This document shows, in pieces, positions 2,533 through 63,619 of a DNA stretch of 64,000 bases. The DNA is from Pecten maximus. Lineage: Eukaryota. Below the pieces are notes generated by a model. The model saw nothing but the letters and a program-made list of their open reading frames with translations. It was not told the origin of the DNA and did no database searches. The position numbers and the translations under genes were made by a program. The stretch covers positions 47,182,001-47,246,000 of the forward strand of contig NC_047020.1 in the NCBI RefSeq assembly GCF_902652985.1, read 5' to 3'. Numbering within the stretch: the first letter of the stretch is position 1; each line of letters starts with the position of its first letter.

Positions 2533-2591
2533 GTAAGAAGCTGTGACACTGACTATCCTGAAGCCAGTTGATTTAAGGTAAGAGTTTCAGC

Positions 2592-5500
2592 ATGTCTACC
2601 GCTGAGAAAACATTAGATGAGCAGCTTACCACAGCTGATGAAAACCTGGACGAGGTTCCTACCCCAGAGAGACAGCGGAGAGTTAGGACCCTGACACCTA
2701 AAGCTGCAGAAAACTATGGTAAACAGGTAGAGAAGTATCAGACGCTTATCAGATCAACCTGGCAAGATGTATATGGGTACATAAACAAAAGAACTGGTTC
2801 TTTTGAGGAAACCTTAGACGCTCTCAATGAGACTAAGAGGAATGTATGCCTGATATATGGGAAATATAGATTGGCATGTAGAGATTTCACCAGTTACCTA
2901 CATGCAAATTACACAGATGAAAGTATTCGTCTCGTTTCGATCCACACTCACGAAGATGGCAAGTGTGATGAATTGGTTCAGAGCATCCTAAAGCAGTTGG
3001 ACTCTAAACAAGAATTACTTGCAGAGAGGGTATCACAGCATTCAAGCAGTCACAGGTCTCACAGGTCTAAATCTAGTCGTACATCTAGTTCTAACTCCGA
3101 AGCATTGCGAGTTAGAGCTAAAGCTGAGAAGGCCAAGGCGGCTAAAGAGTTCATGAAGAAAGAAGCCATGCTGCTTAAACAACAAGCTGTGTTGGCCGAA
3201 CAGGAGGCAGTTTCCAAAGCTAAGTCACAAAGTCATCGACAGGAATTGGAAATAGACTTGAATATTGTGAAGGAGGAGAGAGAATGTGCAGAGGCTGAAA
3301 CCGAAGCAGTTGTGTATGAAGAGTTAAGCTCCCAGGGAGATAGCAGTGAGTCTGAGAACTTTACCTTACCTAAACGAGTTGAAAGTGCTTATGAGCGTAC
3401 TAGGAGTTATGTCAACACACATCAAAGTGCTGAAAGCACTGAAGGCACTGAGAGCACTGAGTTGATAGTGGAACCAACCAACAACCCAGTTACAGTCTCA
3501 CTGCCTGTACCGGTAACTACGACCAAGGATGAAGTTGTACCTTCATTAGTAAACTTCCTCATGCACAAGGAACTCGCATCCTCAAGACTTATGAATTTCA
3601 ACGACAAATCCAATTCATACCTTAGCTGGAAAACTACATTTCAGTCAGTCATGAAAGAAGCCTCCATTACACCAGGTGAAGAACTTGATCTTCTTGTGAA
3701 ATGGCTGGGTCCTGTGTCATCGACATATGCTTCAAGTATAAGGAGTAGTAATGGCAGCAATCCAGCTCTCGGCAAGAAACTTTTATGGGAACGCCTTGAC
3801 GAAAGGTATGGCAGTGCTGAAGCAGTAGAGGCAGCTTTACAAACAAAATTAGATAGTTTTCCTAAACTTATTGACAAGACCAAGATGTATGAACTTGCAG
3901 ATGTTCTCACAGAAATCGAAGTATTGAAGGATGATCCTAAATATCACCAGATCTTGTCGCATTATGACTCTCCATTAGGTGTGAGGCCGGTATTGACAAA
4001 ACTGCCGACACGTGTACAATCTAAGTGGACCGATCGAGCCTTTTCATACAAAAACACGAGACATGTTGCCTTCCCTCCTTTCGTATTTTTTGTAACCTTT
4101 ATAAAGGAAATGGCCCGACTGATGAATGATCCAAGTTTCGTGTTACAAAACGAAAAGTCGACCAGAGAAGATTCCAGGAATCCTGCGAGAACCAACGTCT
4201 ACAGACCAATCACAGTGAAGAAAACGGAAGTTAATTCGGGAGAAAAGGAAGTTAATGTCAAATTCTGTGCAGTTCATAACTCCACGACTCATTCCCTCAA
4301 TGAGTGCAGAGAATTCAGAAGGAAACCTTTGGCGGAGAGGAAACTTTTGTTGAAAGAACATAAGATCTGTTTCAAATGTGGTGAGACTAACTCACACATG
4401 GCTAAAGAATGCAAGGCCATCATTAAATGTAAGCAATGTGGAAGCAAACAACACCCTACTGGTTTACATCAAACTAATGAGAGTGAGCGTAAGGATTTTA
4501 GCCATTCAGAAATGATTCCTCATGGCGGGGAGCAAGTTCAAAGTGTAACAACGAAGTGTACTGCAGTATGTGGACAAGGAATCGGTGGCAGATCCTGTGC
4601 TAAAACTTTACTGGTAAATGTGTTTCCGGCTGAGCAACCAGAAAAGGCCATTACAGTTTACGCAGTGATAGACGACCAAAGTAATAGGACACTGATTAGT
4701 CCAGAGCTTCTTGACCAACTAGGAGTGCAGGGCGAGGATTACTGCTACATTATTTCTTCATGTACCGGAACTGCTCAAGCTTCTGGACGCAAGGCTGACG
4801 GATTAGTCGTTAGTTCGATTGATGGATTTTCGAGTCACTTACTACCGAGTACTATAGAATGTGATGATATACCACAAGACAGATCTGAGGCAGCTACTCC
4901 AGAGGTTGTTCTACATCATAGCCACTTAAAGGAACTGAAAGACCATATTCCTAAGTTCCGATCGGATTGTCACATAGGGCTTCTGATTGGAAGAGATTTA
5001 CCCGAGGCACATCAAGTTCAAAGGCAGATAGTAGGACCTAGACGAGCGCCATTTGCACAGAAGTTGAGCTTAGGATGGGTAGTTATAGGGGAAGTTTGCT
5101 TAGGCAAAGTGCACCCTCCTAGTACTGTCAAGGTAATGAAAACTGCTATAATCAACAGTAGGGGTTCTATATTCCAACCGTGTGACTTCAACCTGTATAC
5201 TAAAGAGAGTTCGGAGAACGACCACATCTTTGTTAAAACGAAGGATGATGAGAAGGTCAGTCTGTCTGTTGAAGATCGTCAGTTCCTTGATGTAATGAAT
5301 GAAGAGTGCCATAAAGATACAGAAGGATTTTGGACAGCACCTTTACCTTTTCGATACCCAAAGTCTAGAATGCCCAACAACAGACCTGTTGCATGGAAGA
5401 GAGCTATGATCCTGGATGCGTCTCTCAAGAAGAACCCTACAAAGCGAGAGCATTTTGTATCCTTCATGCAAAAGGTCCTTGACTCTAAAGCAGCAGAGGT

Positions 5501-31431: not shown

Positions 31432-31931
31432 ACAGACTGTATAAATATTACTGAGTTTATGTAACTATTACCGAGTTTGTGTATTACTGAGATTGTCATG
31501 ACCTACTATCCAGCAATCAAGCAGAATACGAGCAGCGTCCGTATTACTGCTGTTTTCATGTTTGAACTGTATTGTACTGCTTCCCCAGTTTAATTCTAGG
31601 ATTATGTTTGATCCATTTTCCCATTATTCTCTTCATTGCGGAAGCTGTTATCGTTTTCAACCGCAGTCGATTCACATTGGAAGCCATTTTTGTTTTCAGG
31701 ATTTTTAGTGTGTTGTGCGCAAGCGTGTTATCGTATATGTCACAAAATTTGCATATTCAGACTATTGATCAACGAATTGTGATAACCTTTTTATAATTAA
31801 TAATTGATGTTTTTTATGTACATATATCATCAAATTCGAATGGTTACTGTTCATAAGGATATTTGTTTTAAAGATATACCTAATAATATGAAAAAATACA
31901 AAATAAAAATTGGTTTACCGTGATGTCCCTT

Positions 31932-32400
31932 TAAGTGAAAAAAAAGTAGTGTTAAAAAAAAGTTTTTTGCACTTAAGTGTAAAAAAAAGTTTTTTGCACT
32001 TAAGTGTAAAAAAAGTAGTGTAAAAAAAAAGTTTTTTGCGCTTAAGTGTAAAAAAAAGTTTTTTGCACTTAAGTGTAAAAAAGTAGTGTAAAAAAAAAGT
32101 TTTTTGCGCTTAAGTGTAAAAAAAAGTTTTTTGCACTTAAGTGTAAAAAAAGTAGTGTAAAAAAAAGTTTTTTGCACTTAAGTGTAAAAAAAGTAGTGTA
32201 AAAAAAAGTTTTTTGCACTTAAGTGTAAAAAAAGTAGTGTAAAAAAAAAGTTTTTTGCACTTAAGTGAAAAAAAAGTTTTTTGCACTTAAGTGTAAAAAA
32301 AAAGTTTTTTGCACTTAAGTGTAAAAAAAAGTTTTTTGCACTCAAGTGAAAAGAAAGTTTTTTGCACTCAAGTGTAAAAAAAAAGTTTTTTGCACTTAAG
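31932..32400. repeat. Minisatellite of ~25/39-bp units built on the palindrome CACTTAAGTG
   Basis: About 15 copies of AAAAAAGTTTTTTGCACTTAAGTGT with an optional AAAAAAGTAGTGT insert. Confidence 0.95.
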
Positions 32401-46900: not shown

Positions 46901-47269
46901 AATCATCGAGGGTTATCGAATGAATGAATGTCATCCACCATCCATTGATTTACTGTGTGCAAGTACGGTAAAATCACCGTACTTCCGAAGACCTATTTTG
47001 TGACGTAATTTTCCTCAATCCCAAATTACCAATACGAGTTATCTCCCTTTTGCTTGGGCATTGCTACTTCTAGCAAGAATATTCTGTGGTAAAATGTTCG
47101 AATTCAACATATCTACCTGTAAATATTAATTCCAACTTGGGTATGGTGCACGTGTTATATTACGGATCGCATCAAATTAATAATGTATTGTACTTTCTCA
47201 TTGACAGCCGCAGTTACCTCCTCCCATTATTTTTCTTTTTATGGCAAGCCAAAGTGGAAAAAAGTCACT

Positions 47270-47608
47270 ATTTATGGATATCCATAAATGAATTATGGAT
47301 ATCCATAAATAATTCTTAATATCCATAATTGATTCTAATATCCATAATTCGATTTATGGATATCCATAAATACTTATTTATGGATATCCATAAATCAACC
47401 TTAATCATGGATATCCATAATTCATTTATGGATATTAAGATACGAATTATTGATATTTACAGGCGATTTATGAATATCCATAATTCACCGCGTTTTTTAA
47501 ATATCCGTAAATCATTTTTAAATATCCATAAATCAGCGACCCCTATGTCTGGTTGCACTATTAGAGGAGTTCCGAAAAAAAGACATGCGCATATTAAATA
47601 TCCATAAA
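47270..47608. repeat. Array of ~21-bp units with palindromic core TTATGGATATCCATAA
   Basis: More than 10 perfect or degenerate copies; the same family recurs at 48557-48690 and 50505-50655. Confidence 0.85.
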
Positions 47609-48556
47609 TCAGTGAGGCGAGTGTCGTTTACAATCTAAGAACCTCGTTAAGCACCTTGCTCTGATTGGCTGAAAAACACACTGCCAATCTATCGCGCTCG
47701 TTTATTGGTCAATAACAATAGAAAACGAAAGTAGCTTTCAATATAGTTCGGATACACGTACATGTAGATTTACTTTTCCACCTCATCCACAACTTCACTG
47801 ATAGATTTTATGTTTAACGTTAATCACACAAATTACTAATCTTCCATCGAAAGAAAACACAGCAAACTTTACGAGCCTGAAACGAAATGTTTTTGTTGTG
47901 ATCAGACATCGTACACCCGTATATCGTCGCTTTGTTTTTTAAGACCGCGATCTTTTATTGTTCATACATTTTGTATATTTATTTTGAGATCCCTCCCTAC
48001 TTAGGTTGTGGTTTCAACAAGTTTTATTGTGACAACAAAAGGATTAGACAACAGGCAGTGTCTTTATATCAATATACATTTACACAATAAAATAGAATAA
48101 TTTGTTCTAAAGCGAAAAAAAAACCAACATTTGACACTTTTGACTGCCTTTTCAGAAAACATTCAACAGTTTCAAATGGCAACACAATTATTCAGTAATT
48201 TATATTGTTACATATGATCATTGTAAATTTGTGAAATTTTATTGTTAATACAAGTAATGATAAAATGATTATTAAATAGTCTTTGATTTAAGATAATCAA
48301 TTCAAAATAAATATGTAAATGCAATTAATATATACATGTTTTTGTAATTTAATGCATTTATTTTTTTAAATCAATACGTTTTAAATATAGGTCCTGGAGG
48401 CTATCCCTACCCCTAGGGACTTATAGCTTCTAAAAAAAACATTGGCATCCCCACCCTATAACCATTTATAGTATTGCTGCATGGGCATCAAGAAATAAAC
48501 ACAATCCTGTTGTAAATATAGGCATTGGGGTATTTCCCCATCCCTAGGGACTATTA

Positions 48557-48690
48557 TTCGATTTATGGATATCCATAATTCGATTTAAGGATATCCATAA
48601 TTCGATTTATGGATATCTATTATTCGATTTATGGATATCCATAATTCGATTTATGGATATCCATCAATCGAATTATAAATATCCAAAATA
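48557..48690. repeat. 21-bp palindromic-core tandem array
   Basis: (TTCGATTTATGGATATCCATAA) about 6 times. Confidence 0.85.
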
Positions 48691-49395: not shown

Positions 49396-50504
49396 CAAAA
49401 CACTAATAAGGAAAAGAAATTTCTTCATTAACATTATCTAAAACGCTTGTCGTTTGTTTGATACAATTTCCATTGACACCTAGAATATTTAAAACGATCT
49501 GGGTATCGTTTCAAAGCTTCGTAATTAACGAATTTTGCGTAAGTCATATTTACGAATTACTATGAATTACTATGCATTTCACACAAAAATCGTAACTTAC
49601 GAACGTTCGCAAGCAGCTCTTGCTTCCCTCGCTAAGCTCAAAAGTTCCAACACACTCCATCGAAGGCTTTTTCAAAGTCAACAAATATACAATATAACTT
49701 GATTTCCATCATTTGGGTCATATTAATCAAGCTTGACGACAAATATGATCAATTGTCGAATAATTTAAACGAAATCCGGACCGGTTTTCACATATCAAGC
49801 TGACATCCTCTGAATATTTCTGTAGCATTTGATTTAGTATAGATGTACTTTTGAACAACTTTCCCATACAACTGACGATTTTAATCCGCCTGTAATTTCA
49901 TGTTTGATATATCCATTCATATCATTGTCATTAGATTTGTTAACAGAGGAAATACGATGTATTTAATTGAATAAGTTGTACAATTTATGCCCAATCCCGT
50001 TGCTTAAAGGCAATACAATATGTTTAAATCAAATTAAATTTAAGTGTCATTCATTTTAAATACATTGAAGTACATTGTACACCAATCACATACATATAAT
50101 ACAATAAAATGTCCTACATTACGAGACACTATAAACATTAAAATTTTAGCGTTCTTCCGTTACCTTTCAACATATAAGAGTCACCTGTGACATGGGGGCG
50201 TACATAGAAACCAAGATATGAAATCAACTGTACGGAGTTGCCATCCGCCTTCTTGTAAATTGATTTATTCGGGGGAAAATGAATAAGAAAAAAAAACAAA
50301 AACCCTTGGATTAGATAAGAAAGCATGACATGGTTAGAATTGTGGATTCTCAGCAAAACCTGTAAGGTGGCGCTGCTTTACAGTTTACAAAGAAAAGAAA
50401 ATTGACCTAAATGATATGTTCCTTCATTTTCATGTTGGACAATGTTAGTTATTTCATCAAACATCACACAAAATTCGATTTATGAGTTACAAATTGATGA
50501 AATC

Positions 50505-50655
50505 CATAATTTATGGATATCCATAATTCGAATAATGAATAAAATCGAATTATGGATATCCATAATTCGAATAATGGATATCCATAAATCGAATTATGGA
50601 TATCCATAAATCGAATTATGGATATCCATAATTCGATTTATGGATATCCATAATT
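50505..50655. repeat. 21-bp palindromic-core tandem array
   Basis: TTATGGATATCCATAA(A/T)TCGA about 6 times, with units in mixed orientation. Confidence 0.85.
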
Positions 50656-52765
50656 CAAGGTACATTGTACGTTTCTTTTTACTGGCTTCTTTTTGATTAA
50701 CTTCAATGGGTAGACACGTAACTTATAAATAACTACAAGGCACGAACTGTTCATGTTAAAAACTGTGGATGATTCAAACTATTGAAAATTAAAGATACAT
50801 ATGCATATAATTATATGTGTCACCAATTTTCGTAGTACAGTAAAGTTGACCACCGTTAGGGTCACCTTGCCAATCCACCGAGCAATTAGCAAATCAGTGT
50901 CATCCAACGTATTGGGCACAGGTAAGTTTTCATATATTAATAAATTTGCACCATGAATTATTAACTATATTTTCTTTATATTGCTAATAATAAGTTGATT
51001 GTACTCTCATATATGTAAATCATTTTTTGAATCGAGGCTTCTTCTTGCACCACCGTAATAGATGCATATAAGCAAATACGATAAAAATTCTTCATATGAC
51101 AGGATGAAAATTATAAACATTTAAATAGCCCGTGTGTGAGACATAAGACGATCAAACCAGTCCCTAAATTTTGCTTCCAGTTACTTACATGTTTCTTGTC
51201 TCCTCTTGCTGCAATAGAAGTTAGTAACAATACTTAGATAATCTGTATACAGCGAGGACGACTCAATCACGGGTTTAAGGCTTCTAGGATATACGTGTAT
51301 TTGGTAGACTAGAAAAACCGCCGAAAACAACTTTAATGTTGAATTCGATGGGTTATCTATAGGTTGAATTGAAATAACACCTTATACCTATTTATTGATT
51401 TACATAAATTGATTTATGAATATTTACTTTTATAATTATGGATATATCGATATTGATATATCGGAATCTACCCTTTGCAGTTTAAATAAGAACAACTTAT
51501 TTCTTCTACATCGTGCTTAATACCGAATGAATAATTAAATTGAAAGTAAGCATAAGTCCATATCAATCGATTAGTTGCTCGTTTAAATAAAAATGATAAT
51601 TTGTTTCAAGTGATAAGGATTTTAATCATATAAAGCATATGTTGTATCTCAAGTTATCATACCCCGACGCAGGTCATTACTCCTAATGCCTGTGATAATA
51701 TTCCAATGTGTGATTAACGACATTTTATTAAAAAATAGAAACAAAACAAAAACAAGAGAGAGAGAAAAGAACAACATACTGAAATAATTTGTTATAACAT
51801 ATATCATTTGATAGGCATTTTTATAAATATATATAGTCAGACCTTTATTAATTCAAATTATAAGAAATAAGTCCACCGAAAAAGTTATTGAAAGCTGGAA
51901 TCACTGTTTTAATGGGGATGGTCTCATAAAATATTCTAGTTCAATTTAGACATTATTTAATTAATTAATTTTTTTTTCGTTTTATTGCAAGTATTTTGTA
52001 ATATAACTGAAAGAATATGACGAATCGTTTCATTAAATGTTGAAGTCTTCTATAAAAAAAAAGAAATTATGATAAATTTTGCGAATGTCAAATATATATA
52101 TACATGAATTTTATCAGAATTATTTAATATAGTCATAAGTACTTAGAGTTACCTCCCCTGAATTACAGAGATTACTGCACTTCCTGTACCTTATCGGAGC
52201 AAAACAATGTCAAAAGTCACAAAAAGAACATAAACATCTGTTAAAAATCAAGTTTGACTGTTTCATGATCAACATAGTCACTACACTTTGGTCTATAAGT
52301 TGCAGTCGGCGAAGGAAATACTAATCAGACATGTCAGGGACGTATAATAAGAGGGATTCGTAACTCCGCCAATTTGACACCGACGTAGCGAGAGCTTTTG
52401 TATTTGTTCACTGAGCCGTGAAGTTAGCGAGAGCCACTACCCATCGGTGTAGCCATCGATTGCGCTTGCGCAATAGCCTTGATTACAACGCGCGGTTACT
52501 TCCGCTGTCATGTCAACATTCGCCGATTATTGAAGTGTGTTGATAGCGTTTATCATTTCCTTTTCAGAATTAACAGGTTATGTATTAGTAGGTCTTCATT
52601 TGTTGGGAGGACCAATTTTTCGTTGCCACAATGTCTAGCTGTTTAGCGCTATCTATGTCAGGTAGATTTAACTCGCTATTCGTTATTTATGATTTTGTTC
52701 TGGTTCTGAAGCTGTGGTCACTTTGGGAGTGTACGATTCTGTTTCCCCATCATGAAATATGCACA

Positions 52766-54689
52766 ATGGCCAAGTCTGATTTCTTGTCTTGGGATGGGGA
52801 TCTAGATTTAGAGTATTTACTTGGCGATTTCACGGAATATAGCGAGTCTGAGGATTTTTCGGACGAATTTGATGAAGTTGAGACTAAACGTCCCCGTGCT
52901 TCCAAATCTTCTCAAATCCCAAACTAGCATGTTATGTGTGTCCTGAATGCAACAAGTCTTTAAAGACAATAGCTGGTTTTCGTGGCCATACATCCAAACA
53001 ACACGGCAAGACAAATTTAAAAGGTAGGAGTTAAAGTTGGTTTTCACAACATTTTTTTTTTGTTTCAGACCTTTGTATTATTACATTTGTAATTCCTCGA
53101 TATTTAAAAAAAGGAATCCTTTTACTTCATAAATTGTATATAGATTGCCAACAAGAGTATATTGTAAAAGTACAGCCACATGGATTGTTAAGAAAAGCTG
53201 ACCCTGACACAAATGTATTGCAAAGCATAAGACAGTTACTTATACATAGATCGACTCTAGTATATATGTACCTCACTGGAAACAATGTATATTGTAGAAC
53301 ATTATCTGTGTTAATAAATCCTTAAGCTGATTGGACTTCAGATATATAAACAAAATAAATAAAATAAAGGGCAATGTAAAACAATGCAGTAAATAATTAT
53401 CATGTTATTTTCAAACCATTTCCTCAACATCTTAATTTATGTTTACTAAATGTTCAAGTGATAGCAAAGAGTTCTTTATGTTTATCTTTAATGGAAGTGT
53501 TGTATATGTACAGCCATTTAATCTGAACACTATCTTCCACGAATACACTTGTCTTCATTCTTTTAGACTACACATTTCACTTCAGTTTTGAGGACAATCC
53601 TTATGTAAGAAATGATCTTTTCCAGCTTCTGAACATAGGAGTACTAGTATTAAAGATATCGGCTGGCAGAAATCCCCCTCGTCCAACACAAAATCAGGTG
53701 TCTTATCAGAGGAAGATTTCCTGACCATCTTTCCTAAAGCCTATCAGTCTACCTTAGACAACATATTATGTGACTTTGAAGATTCTGCTGAATTTAATTT
53801 GACAAATTTAGTTCATGTTGCAAGGACAGGTAGCACTATATTAAACTTTTATAAAGATTTCTTTGAGGATATATTTGTTACATCAAAGTGTAGTACAAGT
53901 ACTTCAAGTGACCGTGAGGAACTTTTCAACAAGCTTCATATCAAACGCATTGATCAGAATTTAAGCCACAAATGCCATGATCTTTTTCAAGATATAGACC
54001 CCTCCTTGGAAAAGTCATCCATTCAGCATTTTTCTCAGTTAGTTTTACTAGATCTCATTGGTGAAATCTGTGAAGAGCAGACACAGTTGGTTGTGAAGAA
54101 AACTGAACATAATGCAAAATCTCTAACAGACAATGACCAGACAGTGTTGTATTATATTTCCGGTTTTATCATAAGAGCTCTCAGAAAGCGTTACTCCAGG
54201 TGTAGAAACACTGAGAAGTCCCAGTGTTGTCATGCATTTGTTAGCACAAGTAGTTCAAAGGAAAAGACATTCTTGAAGAAGTTTCATAAAATGATCACAA
54301 TGAAAGATCGTGGGGGACTCCAGAAGCCATCAAGTGATTTCTTTTTATTGGTTCGCGAGTGTGAGGTTGTAACTCGTTCCCTGGAAGACACTGACAAACT
54401 GGGAGCTAACTCGTTATTGTTGAGTCCATTAAAAGAAAAAACAATTCAAAGCTTCATGGTTCAGCATTATGCTAAATCTGTTTTATCTGGAGTACCAGAA
54501 AATGTTTTTGACAGTGTACTGGAGGACATTATTAAAGTGTTTCTGACAGTAAGGGGACATGCAGTAGTTCGTGTGGAGAGAAACAAGCTCCGCATGAAAA
54601 CCAAAGTAGACAGTAGTAAGCGTAAGTCTTCCAAACAGTCTTCCAGTCTCCGTCAGACATTAAAGGACATTTCTACAGTGATAGAATGA
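52766..54689 (+). pseudogene. Two-exon gene: acidic N-terminus, C2H2 zinc finger and a domain resembling the P/THAP9 transposase C-terminus; one frameshift in exon 1
   Basis: Exon 1 52766-53023 (MAKSDFLSWDGDL... then, one frame over, YVCPECNKSLKTIAGFRGHTSKQH); GTAG donor; acceptor ttttccAG at 53625; exon 2 in phase with ORF 53799-54689 containing 'LYYISGFIIRALRK...C..F...KDRGGLQKPSSDFF'. Confidence 0.7.
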
Positions 54690-56256
54690 CTTTGTGTCAC
54701 ACAGGTAGAATCAATGGGATGAGTAGTTGTATACAATGGATTCCATATGTACAGGATAAAGATTTTTTTTTAACAAATCACATTTTTCTTTGACTTCCTT
54801 AGACTTTTCCATCCTAAACTTTCAATGAATCAAAGAGATAAAGAAATAAAGATAATAATGAAATTTTATTGGTAACTTCGACCATCAAAATACAAGCAAA
54901 CTTGTTATATTTTACATGTACATATTTACAAATTACAGTTATTGTTTATTCGATTCACTGTAACCGATTCATTTTCCTATATTTTGTTCATTACACATAC
55001 ACATTTCCATATGAAATATCTCTAAAAAGTATATATATCTAATAATCTATGCACATGTGTTTTGGCTATTAGAAATTGCCACTTTTTTGTGCGTGTTCAC
55101 AATGTCTAATATAATATCAAAATAAAGCAGTGGTTCAATTCACAACCTCAAGATTTCAAACAAGATGAACTGAAAAATGGTCATGTTCCCCCCCCCCCCC
55201 CCCCAAGATTAGTAGAAAGATATTCAATTAATGTATATATATGTGATATTTGAAAAATCAGGGACATGTATTTATGAGAACCAACTCTTCACCACTATTT
55301 ATTAAAATGTATATTTATCATTTGACTCTTATGTGCTTTATTTGAACATGTAATGACATTATTTAGATAGCTTGCCATCTTATCATCACCATGTGCATGA
55401 AAGATCAATAAAAAAACTCCATTATTTATGAGATTTGTGTTGATATCACTCTTTTACATACATAGAAAATCGAAGTGAATGTCCTTCCTACACTTTCTAT
55501 TATCGCACATCCAAATTTTTAAATGAAAAAGGCAAATAAAGCTGAATATGTTAACATTTAACAGCGATAAATTAAATATATACAAAGAAAAATTAGTGCA
55601 TGGTATTAAAGTTTTTCCTGTTGTTGCTCATATTTAAGAAAGTAACAAAATGCAGTGTGAACCAGTAATGCCACTACCCTGGTATCAAAACTATTTTAAA
55701 AAAGATTTCTAAAAAATTATCATAGTTAATGCAGAAGATGAATTTTGCATTTTAACATCTACCCACATACAAAAATCTTAATGCGTTGCTGTGTGATGAT
55801 AATATATATATATATACACACAGTGATCATTTTGAGAACAAGTGTAAAAATATTTAAAGTATGTATACTAGAACATTTAATTTTAAGTTCACACAAATGT
55901 TTTCTTTCACTATTAAATACTAATTCAATTTCTATATATTTTCATTTCATTAGCTGATATGAAATATGTATTATGCATGAGTTATAATTATGTACAGTAA
56001 ATAATTATAAGAGATATGAATTAAAGCTGTACACATGTGTTACAGTACTTTTTACACAACATAGCAGCAAATGAGGAAAATATATGCATTATACACTTGC
56101 ATTAACTTACTATTTACCAGTACATTGTATAGTATAGTATAGTATACATGCATGACAAAGCGCATAATATCAAACAAAAATAATTTGTATTCTCAAAGTC
56201 TTTATATTATAATCTCCCATGTTGTTTTGTACCTCATGATGATCATAAATCAATAC

Positions 56257-56825
56257 ACAAGAGATCCCAGAGGGATCTTAATATAAATGCACCCAACATT
56301 GAATGATCTTTACAGATACTGGTTCTATATATATGTCAAACTTATCAGTGATCTCTCTACTTTTCTCCTGTCATGATCACTTATATACTTGTAAAGTCTT
56401 GGCTGATAATTTCCCTCTACTATTTTTCAAGAAATGGTGATAACAAACTTTAATTCTCAAAATCTAAGATAGCTGCCTCATGGCCATTTCACCTATCTGA
56501 TTGAAAATTTAAAATAAACGAGTACAACTAGCTATATAAGGACCAAGGGAAAACTACACATAAAGTTTGAGGAATATCCCTTCTAGTACTTTTTGAGGAA
56601 CATTGAAAATAAACATAAATTCTCTAAATCAAAGATGGCCGTCTGTTGGCCATTTTGTTTTTCTGATCAAGAAATCTAAATTGAAACGACACAAGTAGGG
56701 ACCAAGAGGATCCAATACATGAAGTTAAGAAATATCCTTCTTGTGCTTTTTAAAGATACAGCTATCCTTCTTGTGCTTTTTAAAGATACAGCTATAAAAA
56801 TGATTATCTGATGATGGTGGACTAA
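56257..56825 (+). mobile_element. Third, degenerate copy of the HINE-like element
   Basis: Head ACAAGAGATCCCAGAGGGATCTT, about 2 decayed monomers (GGACCAAGGG...AGTTTGAG..ATATCCC), tail GATGATGGTGGACTA. Confidence 0.75.
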
Positions 56826-57152
56826 ATGTAAGAATAAAATCAAGCAATTATTTTATGTACATCTATATATATCATGCCAACAAGCCAGTGACTCGTAGAC
56901 TGTAGTTATCCAAGAAATTACCATGCCAGCTGGTATATTTCTGAAAATACACACCACTCCGTGACCCTTGCAACGGAAATTGAAGTTGAAAAACATTTAT
57001 TCCTTAAAAAAACCCTTTCTTGTTTTTTTTTACAAGTACTAAGTAGTGTCAAAGCAAGTCCAATACATGTACAGTACCATATAGATTCAGATATCAGTAC
57101 TAGTGCTATCATGATAAGTAACATCAGTTCAGCTTCGATTCAACCAAAGGCA

Positions 57153-59753
57153 TTAATGATTATAATGTGTACGTCTCCTTGGAAGAGGGGTATTGTCAAT
57201 CTGGATATTCTCATTATTGCGCTGAATATTTCCATGTCGAGGGGCCATTGCAAGTGCACCCACTGCACGCATGCTGGTCATAGAATTTCTCACCTCGTAG
57301 ACACTGGGATTATTATTGTTACCTGCTTGATGTCTTTAGTGACCAAAGAGTTGTTCCAGAGGGTCTTGATTAAAAGTATGTGTTAGTACAAACTTTGCAC
57401 CATTTCTGAGCATAAATCTGACACACTCAACAATTGATTGAACACTGATCTTCAGTCCATTTAATGTCTGATAGCTCAATTTCATTTCCTGCTTTTGAGC
57501 GCCAGTGAAATCTACTGGTCTTCTATTAACAGAATTTTCCCAGTCCTCAAAGTATTTCAGGAAATCATCTAACAACCACTTCAATCGCTCATCATGGACA
57601 TATTGGTAGGGATTCAGGTCAGAGTTTCTTGTATTTCTTCCTTCGAAGAGATGTCTCACATTCAAAACATCAAAAAATTTATTCATTATTCGAACAAAGT
57701 TGATGGTCTCGCTGACATTGTCCCCATACATCATTTCGAGTGCAGTTGCAACAGAGGAACTGAAGACTTGTGCTGCTAGACAAACCTTCATACATGAAAA
57801 TGATGTCAAATCAACATGTCCTCGTGTCAATTTTGGGCAAGGGTTATAAATGCCAAGTTCACAATGGTCCTCGTACAATTTTAGTATGTGAAGCCATGAA
57901 ATGTCCTTCCCATCTTTCCATAGTTTCCGTGTGTTTCTGTGAGAATACGAGTTTGCAAAGCAGTTTCGTGTTGTTTTCAAAAGATGTGGCACATCGGATA
58001 TAAAATAAATTTCCCTGTCAGGACAATGGGGATGGACAGTTTTGTAAACAAGCTCATGGTCATCATTTACTCGATGCATCTGGAAAAATTTCCTGTTTGG
58101 CGAAGCTCCATCACATGTGAAAAAAAGCACTTTCAAATTAATGTTTACTTCCAAAATAGCTACAGCCTTCCATAAAATTGAATTCAACAAGTCTGCTGTG
58201 ATACTTGTTGTGGCAAAGGCAGCCAAAGGAAATCTCAGATCCACAGCTATCCCTCTCACCATTAGTACCAACATGAACTTTGCAATGTCTGGGGTTTCAT
58301 TCTTTACCTGCTTTTCCAGATTCAAAAGTTCATTACCGACTTTGTCAATGTCACAATACCCTATCAGTTCCCCAGTATGCTTGTCATAAATTAAGTCCGA
58401 TCGCACTTTGATTTCATCAAATAATAGACCGACACAATTTCTGAATGGCTCCTCAGGATTCAGCATTCCCTTTTTCCTTGCTTCCTCCCTAAGCATCTGA
58501 TTGTCATCTTTTTGGAATCCAAGAGCACTTTTGGTATAATGAGAAAAATCAAAAAGTGTGCGAGCACTTGGAAGTGTGATAAAACCTGAATTTATCATCG
58601 CTTCATATGCAGCCGAAGATTTGTGTCTTAAATACAAACACCAACGGATCACCATAGGATGCCATCTCATACCCTTTAAAGACTTAGCATTTGTACATTT
58701 CAATTGTTCTTCCCAAAATAGTCTCTGAAAGCTGTATTCGTTTGGGAAAGCTCTCCGAACATCATCTTGACATGAAGCCATGAGCTCACACAGTTCCATG
58801 TTTTGTCCAACATCAACCTCCACGCCTTTACTTCTCAGCTCTTGTTTATAATGTCTCTGTTGTCTGACAATCTCACTTTGAAGTCCTTTAATCTTTCCTT
58901 GCTGCTGTTTGATTTTTTCGATAAGAGCTTTCCTGTCCATGTTGGAATGTCTATATTGTTTTTCGATATAATTTGGGGGTGGACTGCTTTCCAGTAGGCG
59001 TGACTTTTCCTCTTGACGTGTTTTTCGTCCCCACAACATATGTCTCACTTTTGAACATGGTTGACATCTTGCACCTTGCACTAACAACTTGCACATAGTA
59101 CTTCGAATTGTTGAAGAATATCTTGTATCTCCTTTAACAGCGCTGAAGTCACCTTCTCTATATGCTGAAGAACTTGTATCTCCGGTGTTGTTGTCAATTA
59201 GAGTTCCAACTTCAACCATACTCTGAAAGCACTCATCTGGACTCCTAAAACAAACAGTATAGCTCTTAAGTTTCTCTAAAATAGCACTTATCTTCAATGG
59301 TGTATCAAACAATGTTGGTAGACCAATCCAAAAGTCATCATCTTTACATATTTCGATTCTATGTACAAAAAGTTTAGCACTTAAATCAGTGTCAATTGTA
59401 ACCGTCAATTTCACTGTTGGTTGGCTGACTTTGTCTGCGGAAGGATATAGTTCCACTATTTGAATGTACTCTCAATAAGAGTTCACTTGATAAGGGAAAG
59501 TCACAGCACTTGAAAGATCAGACCTTAAGCTGTCATAAAATGACAAAGGACCCATGATAGTGTTATCATCTGTGCCGGTGATATCACTGCACTGGTCATT
59601 TTCCAATATACTGCACTGTGGTGCAAGGTCCTGGTGACATTCATCCTCCATTTCACTTGCTCCAAATACGTCTGTGGTACATGTGTTCTCACACCTGTCT
59701 TTCCTTCTGCGTCGGGGACGGCGACCAAGTGACTTTTTTCTGGAACAGCGCAT
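57153..59753 (-). pseudogene. P-element/THAP9-family transposase with two in-frame stops
   Basis: Motifs MRWHPMVIRWCL, ITLPSARTL, LLFDEIKV, TCDGASPNRKFF, SDVPHLLKTTRN, MKVCLAAQV, FNQDPLEQLFG. In-frame TGA at 59472-74 and TAA at 57336-38; the frame continues RHQAGNNNNPSV...HGNI to a stop at 57153. Confidence 0.92.
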
Positions 59754-62700
59754 CTTTGCTGGAAAAATAATACTAGATATTAGTTTGTTAAAAAATGTTT
59801 CTCGTTCTAGGTTAAAAAATGTTTGACCTTCTCCTTTCTGCAAGCAGTTATAAATGCAACATCATAACAAAATAAGTATATAAAGGTTTTTAGATGCATG
59901 ACAAATTTAAATGAGAAATTAATAGAATCATTTCAATTAAAGTTATTATTGATCCTATCACGCTGATTTTTCAGTTTCTTTGGTCTTCTTTCCTATTTGA
60001 TAACATATTTGATAAGTCGGCTATTCCTATAATTTCCTATTAGCTATAATCTTTGCTTTTTTCAATGATGCATTTTTTTCAAAGATTTGAATAAGAATTC
60101 AAGAAATTCAAAAGATAATAAACTAATTATAAGAAATTTAAAAGTTGCTTAAAATCTTTCATATATCACAATTGTAACATATAATCTTAAAATTACCTCG
60201 CACAGATTATAAACAGCATAAATTTTTCTATCAAATCTAACATAAGGTAACATGATGTTTCGCTATGCTATTTGATATTTTCAATTGGTGAAAAATCTGG
60301 ATGAATGTTGTGAATTTTTATTTTTAAATTGCAAAGAAATCAGGCAATTTGTAATTAGGAAAGGGGTTGAATATTGATCGCAAATATAGAGCTGGAAAAT
60401 CAGAGAATCACATTTCATTGTTGAGAAAAGGTTAAAATAATGTGATAGCATCATGTTATGTGAAGATTTGATGTAAGAAAGAAGTTGGATTTCTGTTATT
60501 GGTCTACAATTTTTGTTGTTGTAATATTGCTTCATGGTTAGATTTTCTTCTTTTGATGGCCATTTGCTTTCATGCAAGCATTTGTATACTTGAAATTTCA
60601 CTTTAAATTTATTATCATTTGACATGAAGGATTTACAAATATTGTGAATTTGACACCTTTTTTAATCAATGTGGAACATGGTTATATGCTGTTTTGTTTG
60701 GAGATATCTGATCAGTAATCAATGACAATCATGTTAATTTTACAACAACAAAAATTGTAGACCAATAACAGAAATCCAACTTCTTTCTTACATCAAATCT
60801 TCACATAACATGATGCTATCACATTATTTTAACCTTTTCTCAACAATGAAATGTGATTCTCTGATTTTCCAGCTCTATATTTGCGATCAATATTCAACCC
60901 CTTTCCTAATTACAAATTGCCTGATTTCTTTGCAATTTAAAAATAAAAATTCACAACATTCATCCAGATTTTTCACCAATTGAAAATATCAAATAGCATA
61001 GCGAAACATCATGTTACCTTATGTTAGATTTGATAGAAAAATTTATGCTGTTTATAATCTGTGCGAGGTAATTTTAAGATTATATGTTACAATTTTGATA
61101 TATGAAAGATTTTAAGCAACTTTTAAATTTCTTATAATTAGTTTATTATCTTTTGAATTTCTTGAATTCTTATTCAAATCTTTGAAAAAAATGCATCATT
61201 GAAAAAAGCAAAGATTATAGCTAATAGGAAATTATAGGAATAGCCGACTTATCAAATATGTTATCAAATAGGAAAGAAGACCAAAGAAACTGAAAAATCA
61301 GCGTGATAGGATCAATAATAACTTTAATTGAAATGATTCTATTAATTTCTCATTTAAATTTGTCATGCATCTAAAAACCTTTATATACTTATTTTGTTAT
61401 GATGTTGCATTTATAACTGCTTGCAGAAAGGAGAAGGTCAAACATTTTTTAACCTAGAACGAGAAACATTTTTTAACAAACTAATATCTAGTATTATTTT
61501 TCCAGCAAAGATGCGCTGTTCCAGAAAAAAGTCACTTGGTCGCCGTCCCCGACGCAGAAGGAAAGACAGGTGTGAGAACACATGTACCACAGACGTATTT
61601 GGAGCAAGTGAAATGGAGGATGAATGTCACCAGGACCTTGCACCACAGTGCAGTATATTGGAAAATGACCAGTGCAGTGATATCACCGGCACAGATGATA
61701 ACACTATCATGGGTCCTTTGTCATTTTATGACAGCTTAAGGTCTGATCTTTCAAGTGCTGTGACTTTCCCTTATCAAGTGAACTCTTATTGAGAGTACAT
61801 TCAAATAGTGGAACTATATCCTTCCGCAGACAAAGTCAGCCAACCAACAGTGAAATTGACGGTTACAATTGACACTGATTTAAGTGCTAAACTTTTTGTA
61901 CATAGAATCGAAATATGTAAAGATGATGACTTTTGGATTGGTCTACCAACATTGTTTGATACACCATTGAAGATAAGTGCTATTTTAGAGAAACTTAAGA
62001 GCTATACTGTTTGTTTTAGGAGTCCAGATGAGTGCTTTCAGAGTATGGTTGAAGTTGGAACTCTAATTGACAACAACACCGGAGATACAAGTTCTTCAGC
62101 ATATAGAGAAGGTGACTTCAGCGCTGTTAAAGGAGATACAAGATATTCTTCAACAATTCGAAGTACTATGTGCAAGTTGTTAGTGCAAGGTGCAAGATGT
62201 CAACCATGTTCAAAAGTGAGACATATGTTGTGGGGACGAAAAACACGTCAAGAGGAAAAGTCACGCCTACTGGAAAGCAGTCCACCCCCAAATTATATCG
62301 AAAAACAATATAGACATTCCAACATGGACAGGAAAGCTCTTATCGAAAAAATCAAACAGCAGCAAGGAAAGATTAAAGGACTTCAAAGTGAGATTGTCAG
62401 ACAACAGAGACATTTTAAACAAGAGCTGAGAAGTAAAGGCGTGGAGGTTGATGTTGGACAAAACATGGAACTGTGTGAGCTCATGGCTTCATGTCAAGAT
62501 GATGTTCGGAGAGCTTTCCCAAACGAAAACAGCTTTCAGAGACTATTTTGGGAAGAACAATTGAAATGTACAAATGCTAAGTCTTTAAAGGGTATGAGAT
62601 GGCATCCTATGGTGATCCGTTGGTGTTTGTATTTAAGACACAAATCTTCGGCTGCATATGAAGCGATGATAAATTCAGGTTTTATCACACTTCCAAGTGC

Positions 62701-63619
62701 TCGCACACTTTTTGATTTTTCTCATTATACCAAAAGTGCTCTTGGATTCCAAAAAGATGACAATCAGATGCTTAGGGAGGAAGCAAGGAAAAAGGGAATG
62801 CTGAATCCTGAGGAGCCATTCAGAAATTGTGTCGGTCTATTATTTGATGAAATCAAAGTGCGATCGGACTTAATTTATGACAAGCATACTGGGGAACTGA
62901 TAGGGTATTGTGACATTGACAAAGTCGGTAATGAACTTTTGAATCTGGAAAAGCAGGTAAAGAATGAAACCCCAGACATTGCAAAGTTCATGTTGGTACT
63001 AATGGTGAGAGGGATAGCTGTGGGCCTGAGATTTCCTTTGGCTGCCTTTGCCACAACAAGTATCACAGCAGACTTGTTGTATTCAATTTTATGGAAGGCT
63101 GTAGCTATTTTGGAAGTAAACATTAATTTGAAAGTGCTTTTTTTCACATGTGATGGAGCTTCGCCAAACAGGAAATTTTTCCAGATGCATCGAGTAAATG
63201 ATGACCATGAGCTTGTTTACAAAACTGTCCATCCCCATTGTCCTGACAGGGAAATTTATTTTATATCCGATGTGCCACATCTTTTGAAAACAACACGAAA
63301 CTGCTTTGCAAACTCGTATTCTCACAGAAACACACGGAAACTATGGAAAGATGGGAAGGACATTTCATGGCTTCACATACTAAAATTGTACGAGGACCAT
63401 TGTGAACTTGGCATTTATAACCCTTGCCCAAAATTGACACGAGGACATGTTGATTTGACATCATTTTCATGTATGAAGGTTTGTCTAGCAGCACAAGTCT
63501 TGAGTTCCTCTGTTGCAACTGCACTCGAAGTGATGTATGGGGACAATGTCAGCGAGACCATCAACTTTGTTCGAATAATGAATACATTTTTTGATGTTTT
63601 GAATGTGAGACATCTCTTC
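57645..63619. repeat. 2880-bp inverted duplication (arms 57645-60524 and 60740-63619, 215-bp spacer)
   Basis: Arm coordinates sum constantly to 121264 (no indels); about 10 substitutions seen. Confidence 0.97.
61511..63619 (+). pseudogene. Second, 3'-truncated copy of the P-like transposase
   Basis: Mirror of 57645-59753, shares the TGA at 61790-92, and breaks after 'FDVLNVRHLF', before the catalytic QDPLE motif. Confidence 0.92.

What the first reader, a model, noticed from the sequence alone, without database searches (positions are those of the whole stretch)
52273..59753. Candidate bipartite P-like transposon: the transposase C-terminal domain appears relocated to a separate convergent C2H2-finger gene
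Seen: the minus-strand transposase has the full catalytic core (FDE, CDG, D..H, QD.LE) but no N-terminal THAP finger, and it ends ~70 aa after QDPLE. Facing it tail-to-tail, 2.5 kb away, is a two-exon gene with an acidic N-terminus, a CxxC-x12-H-x4-H finger and the block LYYISGFIIRALRK...C...KDRGGLQKPS.DFF. Known: a 'Y.Y.AGY..RK...C..C...(K/R)GGL..PS' block normally forms the C-terminal extension of P/THAP9 transposases in the same polypeptide. Inference: one element encodes a split, two-component transposase, with DNA binding possibly supplied by the partner's C2H2 finger instead of THAP. A possible terminus CATAGTCACTACAC lies at 52273. Both genes are only lightly decayed (2 stops, 1 frameshift), consistent with a shared age.
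Basis: partly seen in the sequence, partly recalled or inferred. Interest (0 to 1): 0.78.

Follow-up and report, generated by a model that had tools for sequence, protein, structure and literature searches.

The report
Two-gene P-type transposon in scallop
This is a decayed copy of a scallop jumping gene of the P-element type whose cutting enzyme lacks its usual tail domain, while a second, facing gene inside the same element encodes a zinc-finger protein with that tail's fold, so the enzyme seems to be built from two proteins.

Summary
Observation confirmed, with one correction: the element's end is at 52335, not 52273. The genome is Pecten maximus.

The minus-strand gene is a P-type transposase. 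It has the RNase H and GTP-binding-insert domains but no THAP domain. It ends about 65 residues after QDPLE, as do 60 of 60 relatives that carry the motif.

The facing two-exon gene encodes an acidic N-terminus, one C2H2 finger and an all-helical body. Residues 251-413 of that body superpose on the C-terminal domain (CTD) of Drosophila P transposase: 6P5A chain B, Z 11.5, 118/118 residues, rmsd 2.4 Å. This was the top hit of 48,161 chains.

The two genes lie tail-to-tail:
- at 11 loci in four subfamilies of this genome;
- in 15 of 19 non-redundant metagenome transposase clusters that have enough downstream sequence.

Their divergence is correlated (Mantel r 0.91). A sister copy on C18 has imperfect ~33-bp terminal inverted repeats and an 8-bp target-site duplication (TSD), GCTGATTT, enclosing both genes.

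The window copy is dead: two stops, a 7-nt deletion, and its transposase-side end lost to an inverted duplication. That the partner acts as a subunit in trans is inferred, not shown.

The scan earlier noted a different two-gene P element (PIF1 helicase) in this genome. Five literature searches found no published description.

The parts
52335..52367 (+). Partner-side terminal inverted repeat, CAGGGACGTATAATAAGAGGGATTCGTAACTCC
   Evidence: Three unrelated flanks abut this base. In the C18 copy its inverted mate has 1 mismatch and 2 one-base gaps in 33 positions, and an 8-bp TSD GCTGATTT flanks the pair. The transposase-side terminus of subfamily B and the 36-bp TIR of metagenome locus L068 are related in sequence.
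52766..53023 (+). Partner gene exon 1: acidic N-terminus (MAKSDFLSWDGDLDLEYLL...) and a single C2H2 finger. Broken here by a 7-nt deletion behind 52915.
   Evidence: The exon is in frame in the C18, C17 and C4:52.49M copies. The finger is modelled as a beta-beta-alpha unit with pLDDT about 95. C2H2 Pfam families hit 17 of 43 relatives.
53024..53625 (+). Intron of the partner gene (GT..AG, phase 1)
   Evidence: The sequence shows G|GT at 53023/53024 and AG|C at 53625/53626. The junction ...TNLK|ASEHR is that of RefSeq model P0001, and AS[DE]H follows the junction in all four subfamilies. Not confirmed by reads.
53626..54689 (+). Partner gene exon 2: a helical middle domain, then a domain with the fold of the P transposase CTD, then a basic tail
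   Evidence: The open frame is intact. AF2 model of the 99%-identical P0001: pLDDT 84.4. Residues 251-413 match 6P5A chain B 617-734 with Z 11.5, rmsd 2.4, 118/118 aligned. PF12596 match is weak, E 0.031.
54690..57152 (.). Spacer between the two 3' ends. It holds other repeats (high-copy stretch 56194-56900).
   Evidence: The spacer runs from -25 to 4302 nt in metagenome loci.
57153..59753 (-). P-type transposase gene without THAP and without CTD. Two private stop codons (TGA 59472-59474, TAA 57336-57338).
   Evidence: Pfam PF21787 and PF21788. An intact 997-aa relative also has PF21789. The protein ends 60 codons after the second stop. 60/60 relatives with the QDPLE motif end 43-82 residues after it.
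59754..60528 (-). Upstream region of the transposase gene, cut off at 60528. About 1.9 kb of the transposase-side end, including a 214-nt tandem array and the TIR, is missing from this copy.
   Evidence: Comparison with the C18, C17, C4 and C2570 copies.
60529..63619 (+). Second, inverted partial copy of the transposase 5' part. The arm 60736-63619 is 100% identical to 57645-60528. The stretch 60529-60735 is that copy's further upstream sequence.
   Evidence: Either a very recent inverted duplication or an assembly artefact; not resolved.

Best explanation
The region is a dead, rearranged copy of a two-gene DNA transposon of the P superfamily.

Shown:
[quoted passage not shown] It has a conserved four-cysteine N-terminal module in place of THAP, and no C-terminal domain (CTD).
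- Gene P lies tail-to-tail with T inside the same terminal inverted repeats. It encodes an acidic N-terminus, one C2H2 finger, a helical middle domain, a domain with the fold of the P transposase CTD, and a basic tail.
- The two genes travel and diverge together.
- The element inserts with an 8-bp target-site duplication.

Inferred:
- P is a subunit of the transpososome and supplies the CTD in trans.
- In the Drosophila P strand-transfer complex the CTD hangs on a disordered linker. It sits between the RNase H domain of one subunit and the GTP-binding domain of another, and it touches both transposon and target DNA.
- A CTD on a separate chain could therefore take the same place.
- The finger, the basic tail or T's own cysteine module would recognise the ends or the 214-nt subterminal repeats.
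For: Domains of T:
- Pfam domains of the window gene and of an intact relative.
- None of 120 listed relatives has THAP or PF12596.
- 60/60 relatives with the QDPLE motif stop 43-82 aa after it.
- 0/120 T proteins are hit by the partner HMM, and 0/161 partner proteins by the T HMM.

Fold of P:
- The AF2 model has pLDDT 84.4.
- Foldseek gives 6p5a_B a probability of 0.91, against 0.14 or less for the other listed rows.
- VIA-align gives Z 11.5, rmsd 2.4 Å, 118/118 aligned. It is the only chain at Z 8 or more among 48,161; the next scores 7.8.
- PF12596 is the only recurrent non-finger family among relatives: 4/43, best E 2.3e-4.

Linkage:
- 11 convergent pairs in four subfamilies of this genome.
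- 26/80 metagenome loci have the convergent partner, 20/24 of those with at least 1500 nt downstream, and 15/19 non-redundant clusters.
- Mantel r is 0.91, with 0/2000 permutations reaching it.

One element:
- C18 copy: ~33-bp TIRs plus the TSD GCTGATTT around both genes.
- L068: 36-bp TIRs. L126: 51-bp TIRs. Both bracket the two genes.
- At least 518 candidate ends related to the subfamily B terminus, with different flanks in 3/3 fetched.

Geometry of the CTD: passages of review PMC7776569.
Against: - No experiment or co-fold shows that T and P bind each other.
- The Pfam match to PF12596 is below the gathering score in every member tested, and an HMM of the partner does not find 6P5A by sequence.
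- The aligner's own note warns that Z below about 13 can be a common arrangement for helical proteins.
- Four of 24 assessable metagenome loci lack the partner, and one of them has 3327 nt downstream. L055 has the partner upstream and divergent.
- Four T loci in this genome show no partner hit: C1296 twice, C17:12.27M and C13:3.885M.
- No TSD is seen at the TIRs of L068, L126 or L095.
- The splice is not confirmed by reads.
- T keeps its own conserved N-terminal module, so P may not be the DNA-recognition subunit.
Confidence: 0.68

Rival explanations
1. The pair is one transposon, but the partner is not part of the catalytic complex. It would be an accessory or regulatory factor encoded by the element: a repressor, a nuclear-import or chromatin-targeting helper, or an end-binding factor like the Myb-like protein of PIF/Harbinger. 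The transposase would work without any CTD.
For: - The linkage and co-divergence fit this reading as well as they fit a subunit.
- The partner has a finger, an acidic N-terminal motif and an extra helical domain (residues 112-255) with no counterpart in 6P5A.
- Some T loci lack a detectable partner.
- Another P-like family in this genome (785-aa ORF) also ends soon after the RNase H domain.
Against: - The partner's best-conserved part is exactly the CTD-like domain: YISGY, RGGL..PS, FL.VRG.A.
- It covers all 118 modelled CTD residues.
- In the solved P complex the CTD contacts transposon and target DNA (review passages).
- A pure regulator would be lost more often than in 4 of 19 clusters.
Confidence: 0.22
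2. The partner gene is a leftover: an inverted 3' fragment of an ordinary single-gene P transposase, or an unrelated neighbouring element, that lies next to a truncated transposase by chance or by nested insertion.
For: - This copy is rearranged (palindrome).
- Derivatives with two partner-side ends exist.
- The C4:52.63M copy shares the window's left flank, so some copies arose by segmental duplication and not by transposition.
Against: - The arrangement is the same in four subfamilies at 35-41% (partner) and 55-59% (transposase) identity, and in 15/19 non-redundant metagenome clusters.
- The partner is a stand-alone family: 1315 clusters at 50% identity, and the top 150 are all 480 aa or shorter with their own N-terminal finger.
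- Intact transposases end at the same place.
- TIRs and a TSD enclose both genes.
Confidence: 0.03
3. The pair is a domesticated host gene pair derived from a P element, not a mobile element.
For: - RefSeq annotates intact copies as ordinary genes of unknown function.
- Both proteins are conserved across phyla.
Against: - There are many copies per genome in several subfamilies, with private stops, deletions and rearrangements.
- TIRs and a TSD are present.
- Hundreds of related non-autonomous ends have different flanks.
- The two subfamily B copies are 99.67% identical over 10,235 nt on different chromosomes.
Confidence: 0.03

Closest known systems
Drosophila P element and THAP9-type elements (P superfamily)
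   Same: - A split RNase H catalytic domain with a GTP-binding insertion domain (PF21787/8/9).
- The region before it carries the conserved MRWHP...LPS.RTL block seen in alignment A3. I read this as the helix-turn-helix of P transposases from recall, not from a call.
- An 8-bp TSD and TIRs of about 31-33 bp.
- A CTD of the same fold exists in the system.
   Different: - No THAP domain in the transposase.
- The CTD is not in the transposase polypeptide. It sits in a second, convergent, finger-bearing gene.
- There are two genes instead of one.
- A 214-nt tandem array lies next to the transposase-side end.
PIF/Harbinger elements (transposase plus Myb-like protein)
   Same: A cut-and-paste element that needs, or at least carries, a second gene for a DNA-binding protein beside the DDE transposase. 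That is how this element may work. The Harbinger biology is recalled, not read here. Only a search listing of PMC9179366 was seen.
   Different: - It is an unrelated transposase superfamily.
- The second protein there is a Myb/SANT protein, not a piece of the transposase's own domain set.
- The TSD is 3 bp (recalled).
RAG-like (ProtoRAG/RAGL) transposons
   Same: Two convergently oriented genes inside the TIRs of a DNA transposon, found in marine invertebrates. The start of the abstract of PMC7204232 was seen in the listing.
   Different: - It is an unrelated catalytic family (Transib/RAG1).
- RAG2L is a Kelch/PHD protein, not a detached domain of the transposase (recalled).
Two-gene P transposon with a PIF1 helicase, noted earlier by this scan in the same genome (s1-786392, s1-786415)
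   Same: According to those AI notes, a P-type transposase lacks its CTD and a CTD-like fold sits on a second protein of the same element. I did not check this.
   Different: - The second protein there is a PIF1 helicase, not a C2H2-finger protein.
- The partner exon-2 search of this genome returned 19 matches. 15 of them lie at the 11 convergent pairs. The other four places were not examined for neighbouring genes, so no helicase link was looked for.
Galileo and other foldback-like members of the P superfamily
   Same: Members of the P superfamily associated with long inverted structures and rearrangements. The start of the abstract of PMC3688188 was seen in the listing. Here there are head-to-head partial copies and derivatives with two identical ends of about 340 nt.
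   Different: Galileo has a THAP-bearing single transposase. The TIRs of the intact-ended C18 copy here are short.

Membership tests
P superfamily of DNA transposons | [quoted passage not shown] | tested here: met
   PF21787 E 2e-21 and PF21788 E 4e-20 in the window gene. PF21787/8/9 in the intact 997-aa relative. FDE, CDG, SDxPH and QDPLE residues are invariant in 13 sequences.
P superfamily of DNA transposons | 8-bp (7-8) target-site duplication | tested here: met
   GCTGATTT on both sides of the C18 sister copy. Not testable on the window copy, which has lost one end. Not seen at the TIRs of metagenome contigs L068, L126 and L095, where assembly across repeat copies may mix flanks.
P superfamily of DNA transposons | Short terminal inverted repeats (31 bp in Drosophila P; that figure is recalled) | tested here: met
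   C18 copy: the first 33 positions have 1 mismatch and 2 one-base gaps. L068 has 36 bp and L126 has 51 bp.
P superfamily of DNA transposons | [quoted passage not shown] | tested here: not met
   No THAP in Pfam scans, nor in the precomputed Pfam of 120 relatives. The N-terminal module was modelled at pLDDT 92.5 and finds no THAP or other fold in the PDB. The VIA-align list was filled by its helices, so residues 1-125 were barely tested there.
P superfamily of DNA transposons | Single gene whose product carries the C-terminal domain | tested here: not met
   Relatives end 43-82 aa after QDPLE (60/60). The CTD-like fold is in the second gene.
P transposase C-terminal domain (Pfam PF12596, fold of 6P5A residues 617-734), for the partner protein | Score above Pfam's gathering threshold (22.6 bits) | tested here: not met
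   15.3 bits (E 0.031) in the window exon 2 and 12.9 bits in the subfamily D copy. 4 of 43 relatives match at E 0.1 or better, best 2.3e-4.
P transposase C-terminal domain (Pfam PF12596, fold of 6P5A residues 617-734), for the partner protein | Same three-dimensional fold over the whole domain | tested here: met
   Z 11.5, rmsd 2.4 Å, 118 of 118 residues, 17% identity, model residues 251-413. Rank 1 and the only chain at Z 8 or more among 48,161 representatives. Foldseek probability 0.91 but E 0.85.
P transposase C-terminal domain (Pfam PF12596, fold of 6P5A residues 617-734), for the partner protein | Docks between the RNase H and GTP-binding domains and contacts transposon and target DNA | not testable with these tools
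   No multimer prediction is on hand. The geometry in the P element complex was read in passages of PMC7776569.
C2H2 zinc finger, for the partner protein | C-x2-C-x12-H-x3-5-H with a beta-beta-alpha fold | tested here: met
   CPEC-x12-H-x4-H at 52942-53009. zf-C2H2 families match 17/43, 12/43 and 9/43 relatives, all below the gathering scores for P0001. Modelled with pLDDT 95-97.

The most novel reading that the evidence does not exclude
A widespread clade of P-superfamily transposons works as an obligate two-protein transposase. It occurs in molluscs, annelids, hemichordates and cephalochordates, and the transposase family also occurs in echinoderms, Hydra and a thrips. The catalytic chain has lost, or never had, its DNA-contacting C-terminal domain. 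A separately transcribed, convergent finger protein brings that domain in trans.

Together the two cases would mean that the P transposase CTD is a portable module that has been placed on different carrier proteins. The single-chain P/THAP9 enzyme could then be a fusion rather than the ancestral state.
Probability: 0.45. Interest if true: 0.82.

Novelty: new variant of a known kind. Interest (0 to 1): 0.72.

Why it matters
P element transposase is one of the best studied eukaryotic transposases, and THAP9 is its human relative. Both are described as single polypeptides, as the review passages put it.

- **A natural experiment on the CTD.** A natural system with the DNA-contacting C-terminal domain on a separate protein would allow direct tests. 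One could leave the domain out, titrate it or swap it without cutting the enzyme.
- **A named role for an uncharacterised family.** The partner family has 1315 clusters at 50% identity and appears in databases only as uncharacterised or 'C2H2-type domain-containing' proteins. It would gain a role.
- **Better annotation.** It would correct how such loci are annotated in mollusc and other marine invertebrate genomes.
- **A second convergent two-gene transposon.** It would add a second example, beside RAG-like elements, of a convergent two-gene cut-and-paste transposon.
- **A candidate for an assay.** Subfamily D has an intact 997-aa T ORF and an annotated intact partner, and the two subfamily B copies are 99.67% identical. 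These suggest recent activity and a possible source for a transposition assay.

Tried and rejected
The 62 nt between it and 52335 belong to a flank shared only with segmentally duplicated loci (C3772, C4:23.03M, C466). The C18 flank and a satellite-type flank meet the element exactly at 52335.
- **1716-bp 'elements' with two identical ends as MITEs for a TSD test: rejected.** They are rearrangement products. Each is two partner-side ends in inverted order joined by 149 nt from window 31786-31934, and they share flanks with each other. They show no TSD.
- **TIR search inside the 10-kb stretches of subfamilies B, C and D:** nothing convincing.
- **Partner-side end and finger exon of subfamily B:** neither was found in what I could fetch. 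One copy has an assembly gap (N) there, which I left as it is.
- **Sequence-level link to the solved P transposase:** a partner profile against PDB sequences gave only a chance hit, E 1.6.
- **PF12596 against the whole genome:** no candidate, and the tool's controls did not ring either, so this is uninformative.
- **ESM Atlas look-alikes of the partner's C-terminal half:** all scores under 0.8 and its own model is poor, so this is uninformative.
- **Fold of the transposase's N-terminal module:** no PDB match. The VIA-align list was filled by the helical hairpin 212-260, so residues 1-125 were barely tested.
- **RNA support.**
  - Only Logan contigs were available, and none bridges the splice.
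  - One RNA-library contig covers exon 1 plus intron unspliced. It ends where the rearranged derivatives end, so it probably comes from one of them.
- **Partner search in metagenome contigs with partner alignments:** I therefore searched with the transposase and looked for the partner beside it.
- **Literature:** five full-text searches found no two-gene P element and no description of the partner family. Repbase reports, subscription journals and supplements were not searchable.
- **Spliced model:** The full-length partner that I folded is the database protein P0001 of the C18 copy.

Full report
**What is in the window**

The genome is that of the king scallop, Pecten maximus. The intact form of the partner protein is RefSeq XP_033727600.1 of that species, and it lies on a contig whose length equals that of C18 of this assembly.

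On the minus strand, a 706-aa open frame (57336-59456) belongs to a longer reading frame.
- The frame starts at the ATG at 59753 and runs through a TGA at 59472-59474.
- It passes a TAA at 57336-57338 and ends 60 codons later at 57153-57155.
- Pfam finds the N-terminal half of the P-type RNase H domain (PF21787, E 2e-21) and the GTP-binding insertion domain (PF21788, E 4e-20), and nothing else.

On the plus strand lies the second gene.
- Exon 1 (52766-53023) encodes an acidic stretch and, after a frameshift, the finger CPEC-x12-H-x4-H.
- A GT..AG intron follows (53024-53625).
- Exon 2 (53626-54689) is open and contains the block LYYISGFIIRALRK ... KDRGGLQKPS.

All three lesions are private to this copy.
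- Sister copies read TCA and TAC at the two stops.
- Sister copies carry seven more bases (CATCTTG) behind 52915.

**The transposase really lacks THAP and the C-terminal domain**

An intact relative in this genome has PF21787, PF21788 and PF21789 only (subfamily D, C18, 997 aa). It starts MPKKKR... and ends ...LPKRKR about 70 residues after QDPLE.

A search of 5.8 billion proteins gave 248 relatives at E 1e-5 or better among the 8000 candidates scored. None of the 120 listed carries THAP or PF12596 in its precomputed Pfam domains.

The listed relatives come from bivalves, gastropods, Ptychodera, two echinoderms, Hydra and a thrips. In an alignment of 13, the full-length ones all stop at the same place. 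Of the 120, 60 contain the motif NQD[PA][LI]E. All 60 end 43-82 residues after it, with a median of 65. That leaves no room for a domain of about 120 residues.

The first 125 residues of the window ORF form a beta-rich module.
- It has four invariant cysteines (C69, C122, C131, C134 in 60 sequences).
- It was modelled at pLDDT 92.5.
- It found no match in the PDB, THAP included. The VIA-align list was filled by the model's helices, so this module was barely tested there.

**The partner has the fold of the missing domain**

By sequence the link is weak.
- PF12596 scores 15.3 bits (E 0.031) against a cut-off of 22.6 in the window protein.
- It scores 12.9 bits in subfamily D.
- It matches 4 of 43 relatives at E 0.1 or better, best 2.3e-4.
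- A partner profile does not find the solved P transposase by sequence.

By structure the link is clear.
- I folded the database protein P0001 (442 aa, 99% identical to the window's exon 2) with 109 aligned relatives. The model has pLDDT 84.4 and pTM 0.74.
- Foldseek ranked 6P5A chain B fifth by E-value (0.85). Its probability was 0.91, against 0.14 or less for the other listed rows.
- VIA-align gave Z 11.5 and rmsd 2.4 Å with all 118 residues of the chain aligned. These are residues 617-734 of the transposase, its C-terminal domain. They align to model residues 251-413.
- In an unbiased comparison with 48,161 representative chains, this was rank 1 and the only chain at Z 8 or more. The next scored 7.8.

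The aligner warns that Z under about 13 can be a common arrangement in helical proteins. I give weight to the match for four reasons: the cover is complete, the gap to the next row is wide, it agrees with the only recurrent Pfam hint, and this one chain was the hypothesis before the search.

The rest of the partner has three parts.
- A finger modelled as beta-beta-alpha, with pLDDT about 95.
- A helical domain (about 112-255) without a clear match.
- A basic tail.

**The two genes are one unit**

In this genome the partner's exon 2 finds 19 matches and the transposase 64.

At 11 places the two lie tail-to-tail, 1.7-2.7 kb apart, in four subfamilies:

| Subfamily | Places |
|---|---|
| A | window, C18:311-316k, C17:12.80M, C4:52.63M |
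| B | C5:3.89M, C13:27.57M |
| C | C4:52.49M, C3361, C13:10.32M, C6:44.66M |
| D | C18:9-15k |

Identity to the window is only 35-41% for the partner and 55-59% for the transposase.

Against this:
- Four transposase places show no partner hit: C1296 twice, C17:12.27M and C13:3.885M.
- Four partner places show no transposase hit: C336 (the held locus ends too soon to judge), C13:3.47M, C22 and C5:32.6M.

Outside this genome the partner family is large.
- There are 1315 clusters at 50% identity with E 1e-3 or better.
- All of the top 150 are 480 aa or shorter, with the match at their C-terminal end.
- They are named only 'uncharacterized' or 'C2H2-type domain-containing'. They come from bivalves, gastropods, an annelid, a hemichordate and amphioxus.

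I therefore fetched 80 metagenome contigs that encode a transposase relative and scanned their six frames with a partner HMM.
- 26 of 80 have the partner downstream on the opposite strand.
- 20 of 24 do so among contigs with at least 1500 nt downstream.
- 11 of 12 do so among contigs with at least 3000 nt downstream.
- Counting clusters of transposases at 95% identity, the figures are 15 of 19 and 7 of 8.
- No partner hit lies on the same strand as the transposase.
- The exceptions are L056, L070, L080 and L085 (none found) and L055 (partner upstream, divergent).

In five contigs the finger and the CTD-like domain stand in one uninterrupted ORF. This shows, independently of any splice, that they belong to one protein.

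Across 22 non-redundant loci the pairwise identities of transposases and of partners correlate: Mantel r 0.91, and 0 of 2000 permutations reach it. Shared host ancestry contributes to such a correlation. The four subfamilies within one genome follow it too.

No fusion was seen. 0 of 120 transposase proteins are hit by the partner HMM, and 0 of 161 partner proteins by the transposase HMM, at E 10.

**Ends of the element**

The C18 copy, a set of satellite-flanked ends (C3772, C4:23.03M, C2510) and the window-type flank all meet the element at 52335, CAGGGACGTATAATAAGAGGGATTCG.

The window copy has no transposase-side end.
- At 60528 it runs into a second, inverted partial copy.
- The arms 57645-60528 and 60736-63619 are 100% complementary.
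- The 207 nt between them are the second copy's own upstream sequence.

In the C18 copy I found the other end at C18:308273, CAGGGACATATATAGAGGGATTCGTAACTCC.
- It matches the partner-side end with one mismatch and two one-base gaps in 33 positions.
- The eight bases GCTGATTT stand directly outside both ends.
- That copy is 8283 bp. It holds the intact partner gene and an internally deleted transposase gene.
- A 214-nt tandem array of 5.8 units lies between the transposase-side end and the gene.

Subfamily B tells a similar story.
- Its two copies are 99.67% identical over 10,235 nt on different chromosomes.
- They end at CAGAGACATATATACAGAGAGATTAG with different flanks.
- The terminal 120 nt have 518 first-look candidates in the genome. 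40 were scored: the two copies themselves, one at 97% and 37 at 92-93%.
- Three fetched copies have three different flanks at that base.
- Non-autonomous relatives are therefore abundant.

In metagenome contigs, 36-bp TIRs (L068) and 51-bp TIRs (L126; L095 has the same ends) bracket both genes. No TSD is visible there, possibly because assemblies of multi-copy elements mix flanks. I count the TSD as shown once, in a long-read chromosome assembly.

**How it most likely works**

Shown:
- It is a P-superfamily cut-and-paste element with two convergent genes.
- The catalytic chain lacks the CTD.
- The second protein has the CTD fold.

Read in review PMC7776569 (passages), on the Drosophila strand-transfer complex:
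- The CTD is tied to the RNase H domain by a flexible, disordered linker.
- It is all-helical.
- It contacts transposon and target DNA.
- It ends in a basic stretch aimed at the target.

Inferred:
- A domain that already acts across subunits on a loose tether can be supplied as a separate chain.
- The partner would dock its residues 251-413 in that site. Its basic tail and perhaps its finger would add DNA contacts.
- Which protein reads the TIRs or the subterminal array is open. The transposase's own cysteine module is as good a candidate as the finger.

I put the two-gene transposon at about 0.9 and the trans-CTD subunit role at about 0.65.

**RNA**

Only assembled contigs of public runs could be laid.
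- Short contigs tile exon 2 (53770-54779) in one run whose RNA status is a guess.
- An RNA-library contig covers 52601-53562 unspliced. It stops where the rearranged derivatives stop.
- No contig bridges the intron.

Expression and splicing of this family therefore remain unconfirmed here.

**Novelty**

Five full-text searches found no P-type element with a second gene and no account of the partner family. Repbase reports, subscription journals and supplements could not be searched.

The scan itself has earlier AI notes on this genome.
- One set describes a different two-gene P element whose CTD-like fold is said to sit on a PIF1 helicase.
- Another describes CAGAGAC...GTCTCTG palindromes, which use the same heptamer as the subfamily B terminus.
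- I did not check those notes beyond the shared heptamer.

I rate this a new variant of a known kind.

Noticed in passing
window 57645-60528 and 60736-63619: A perfect (100%) 2884-nt inverted repeat of the transposase 5' part with 207 nt between the arms. Other copies differ by 1-2%, so this is either a very recent inverted duplication or an assembly artefact. Beyond 63619 the second copy runs into unrelated sequence while its frame stays open (807 aa).
   Followed up: partly
window 31786-31934; G000 C3772:17572-19287, C4:23030525-23032240, C466:46876-48588: Three 1.7-kb structures made of two partner-side ends of the element in inverted order, joined by a 149-nt piece that matches window 31786-31934. 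They are rearrangement products that were then segmentally duplicated, since they share flanks.
   Followed up: partly
window 50057-51508 and 53741 onward, against G000 C4:52627972-52631751: The C4:52.63M copy joins the window's left flank (50057-51508, 98.6% identical) directly to 53741. That copy and the window copy therefore share flanking DNA and differ by a 2.2-kb deletion. This points to segmental duplication, not independent insertion.
   Followed up: no
window 50500-50660, also 47240-47480 and 48556-48690: A satellite of about 22-nt palindromic units (GGATATCCATAATTCGAAT-like). The same satellite flanks element ends on C3772, C4:23.03M and C2510.
   Followed up: no
G000 C12:3860990-3861685, C2:25982504-25983088, C1:10283842-10284459: Open frames of about 400-420 aa that match only the transposase's N-terminal part (residues 2-238, 41-42% identity). 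They may be stand-alone relatives of the four-cysteine module plus coiled coil.
   Followed up: no
L054 (G000 C11:573800-578000), ORF 790-3147: Another P-like family (785-aa intact ORF, about 27% identical, several copies with 793-aa open frames). It also lacks THAP and ends soon after the RNase H domain. It may be the family of the scan's earlier PIF1-helicase note.
   Followed up: no
L137 230-1479 (G000 C18:308629-309878); subfamily B C13:27579054-27579867: A tandem array of 211-214-nt units (5.8 copies in family A) lies between the transposase-side terminus and the transposase gene in two subfamilies. It is a candidate set of subterminal binding sites.
   Followed up: partly
L055 4371-5399 (-) and 5762-8617 (+): The one metagenome contig where the partner lies upstream of the transposase in divergent orientation instead of downstream and convergent.
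   Followed up: no
window 56194-56900: A stretch in the spacer between the two genes with very high contig depth in all four runs laid, and many loose ends. It is a different high-copy repeat inserted in or near the spacer.
   Followed up: no
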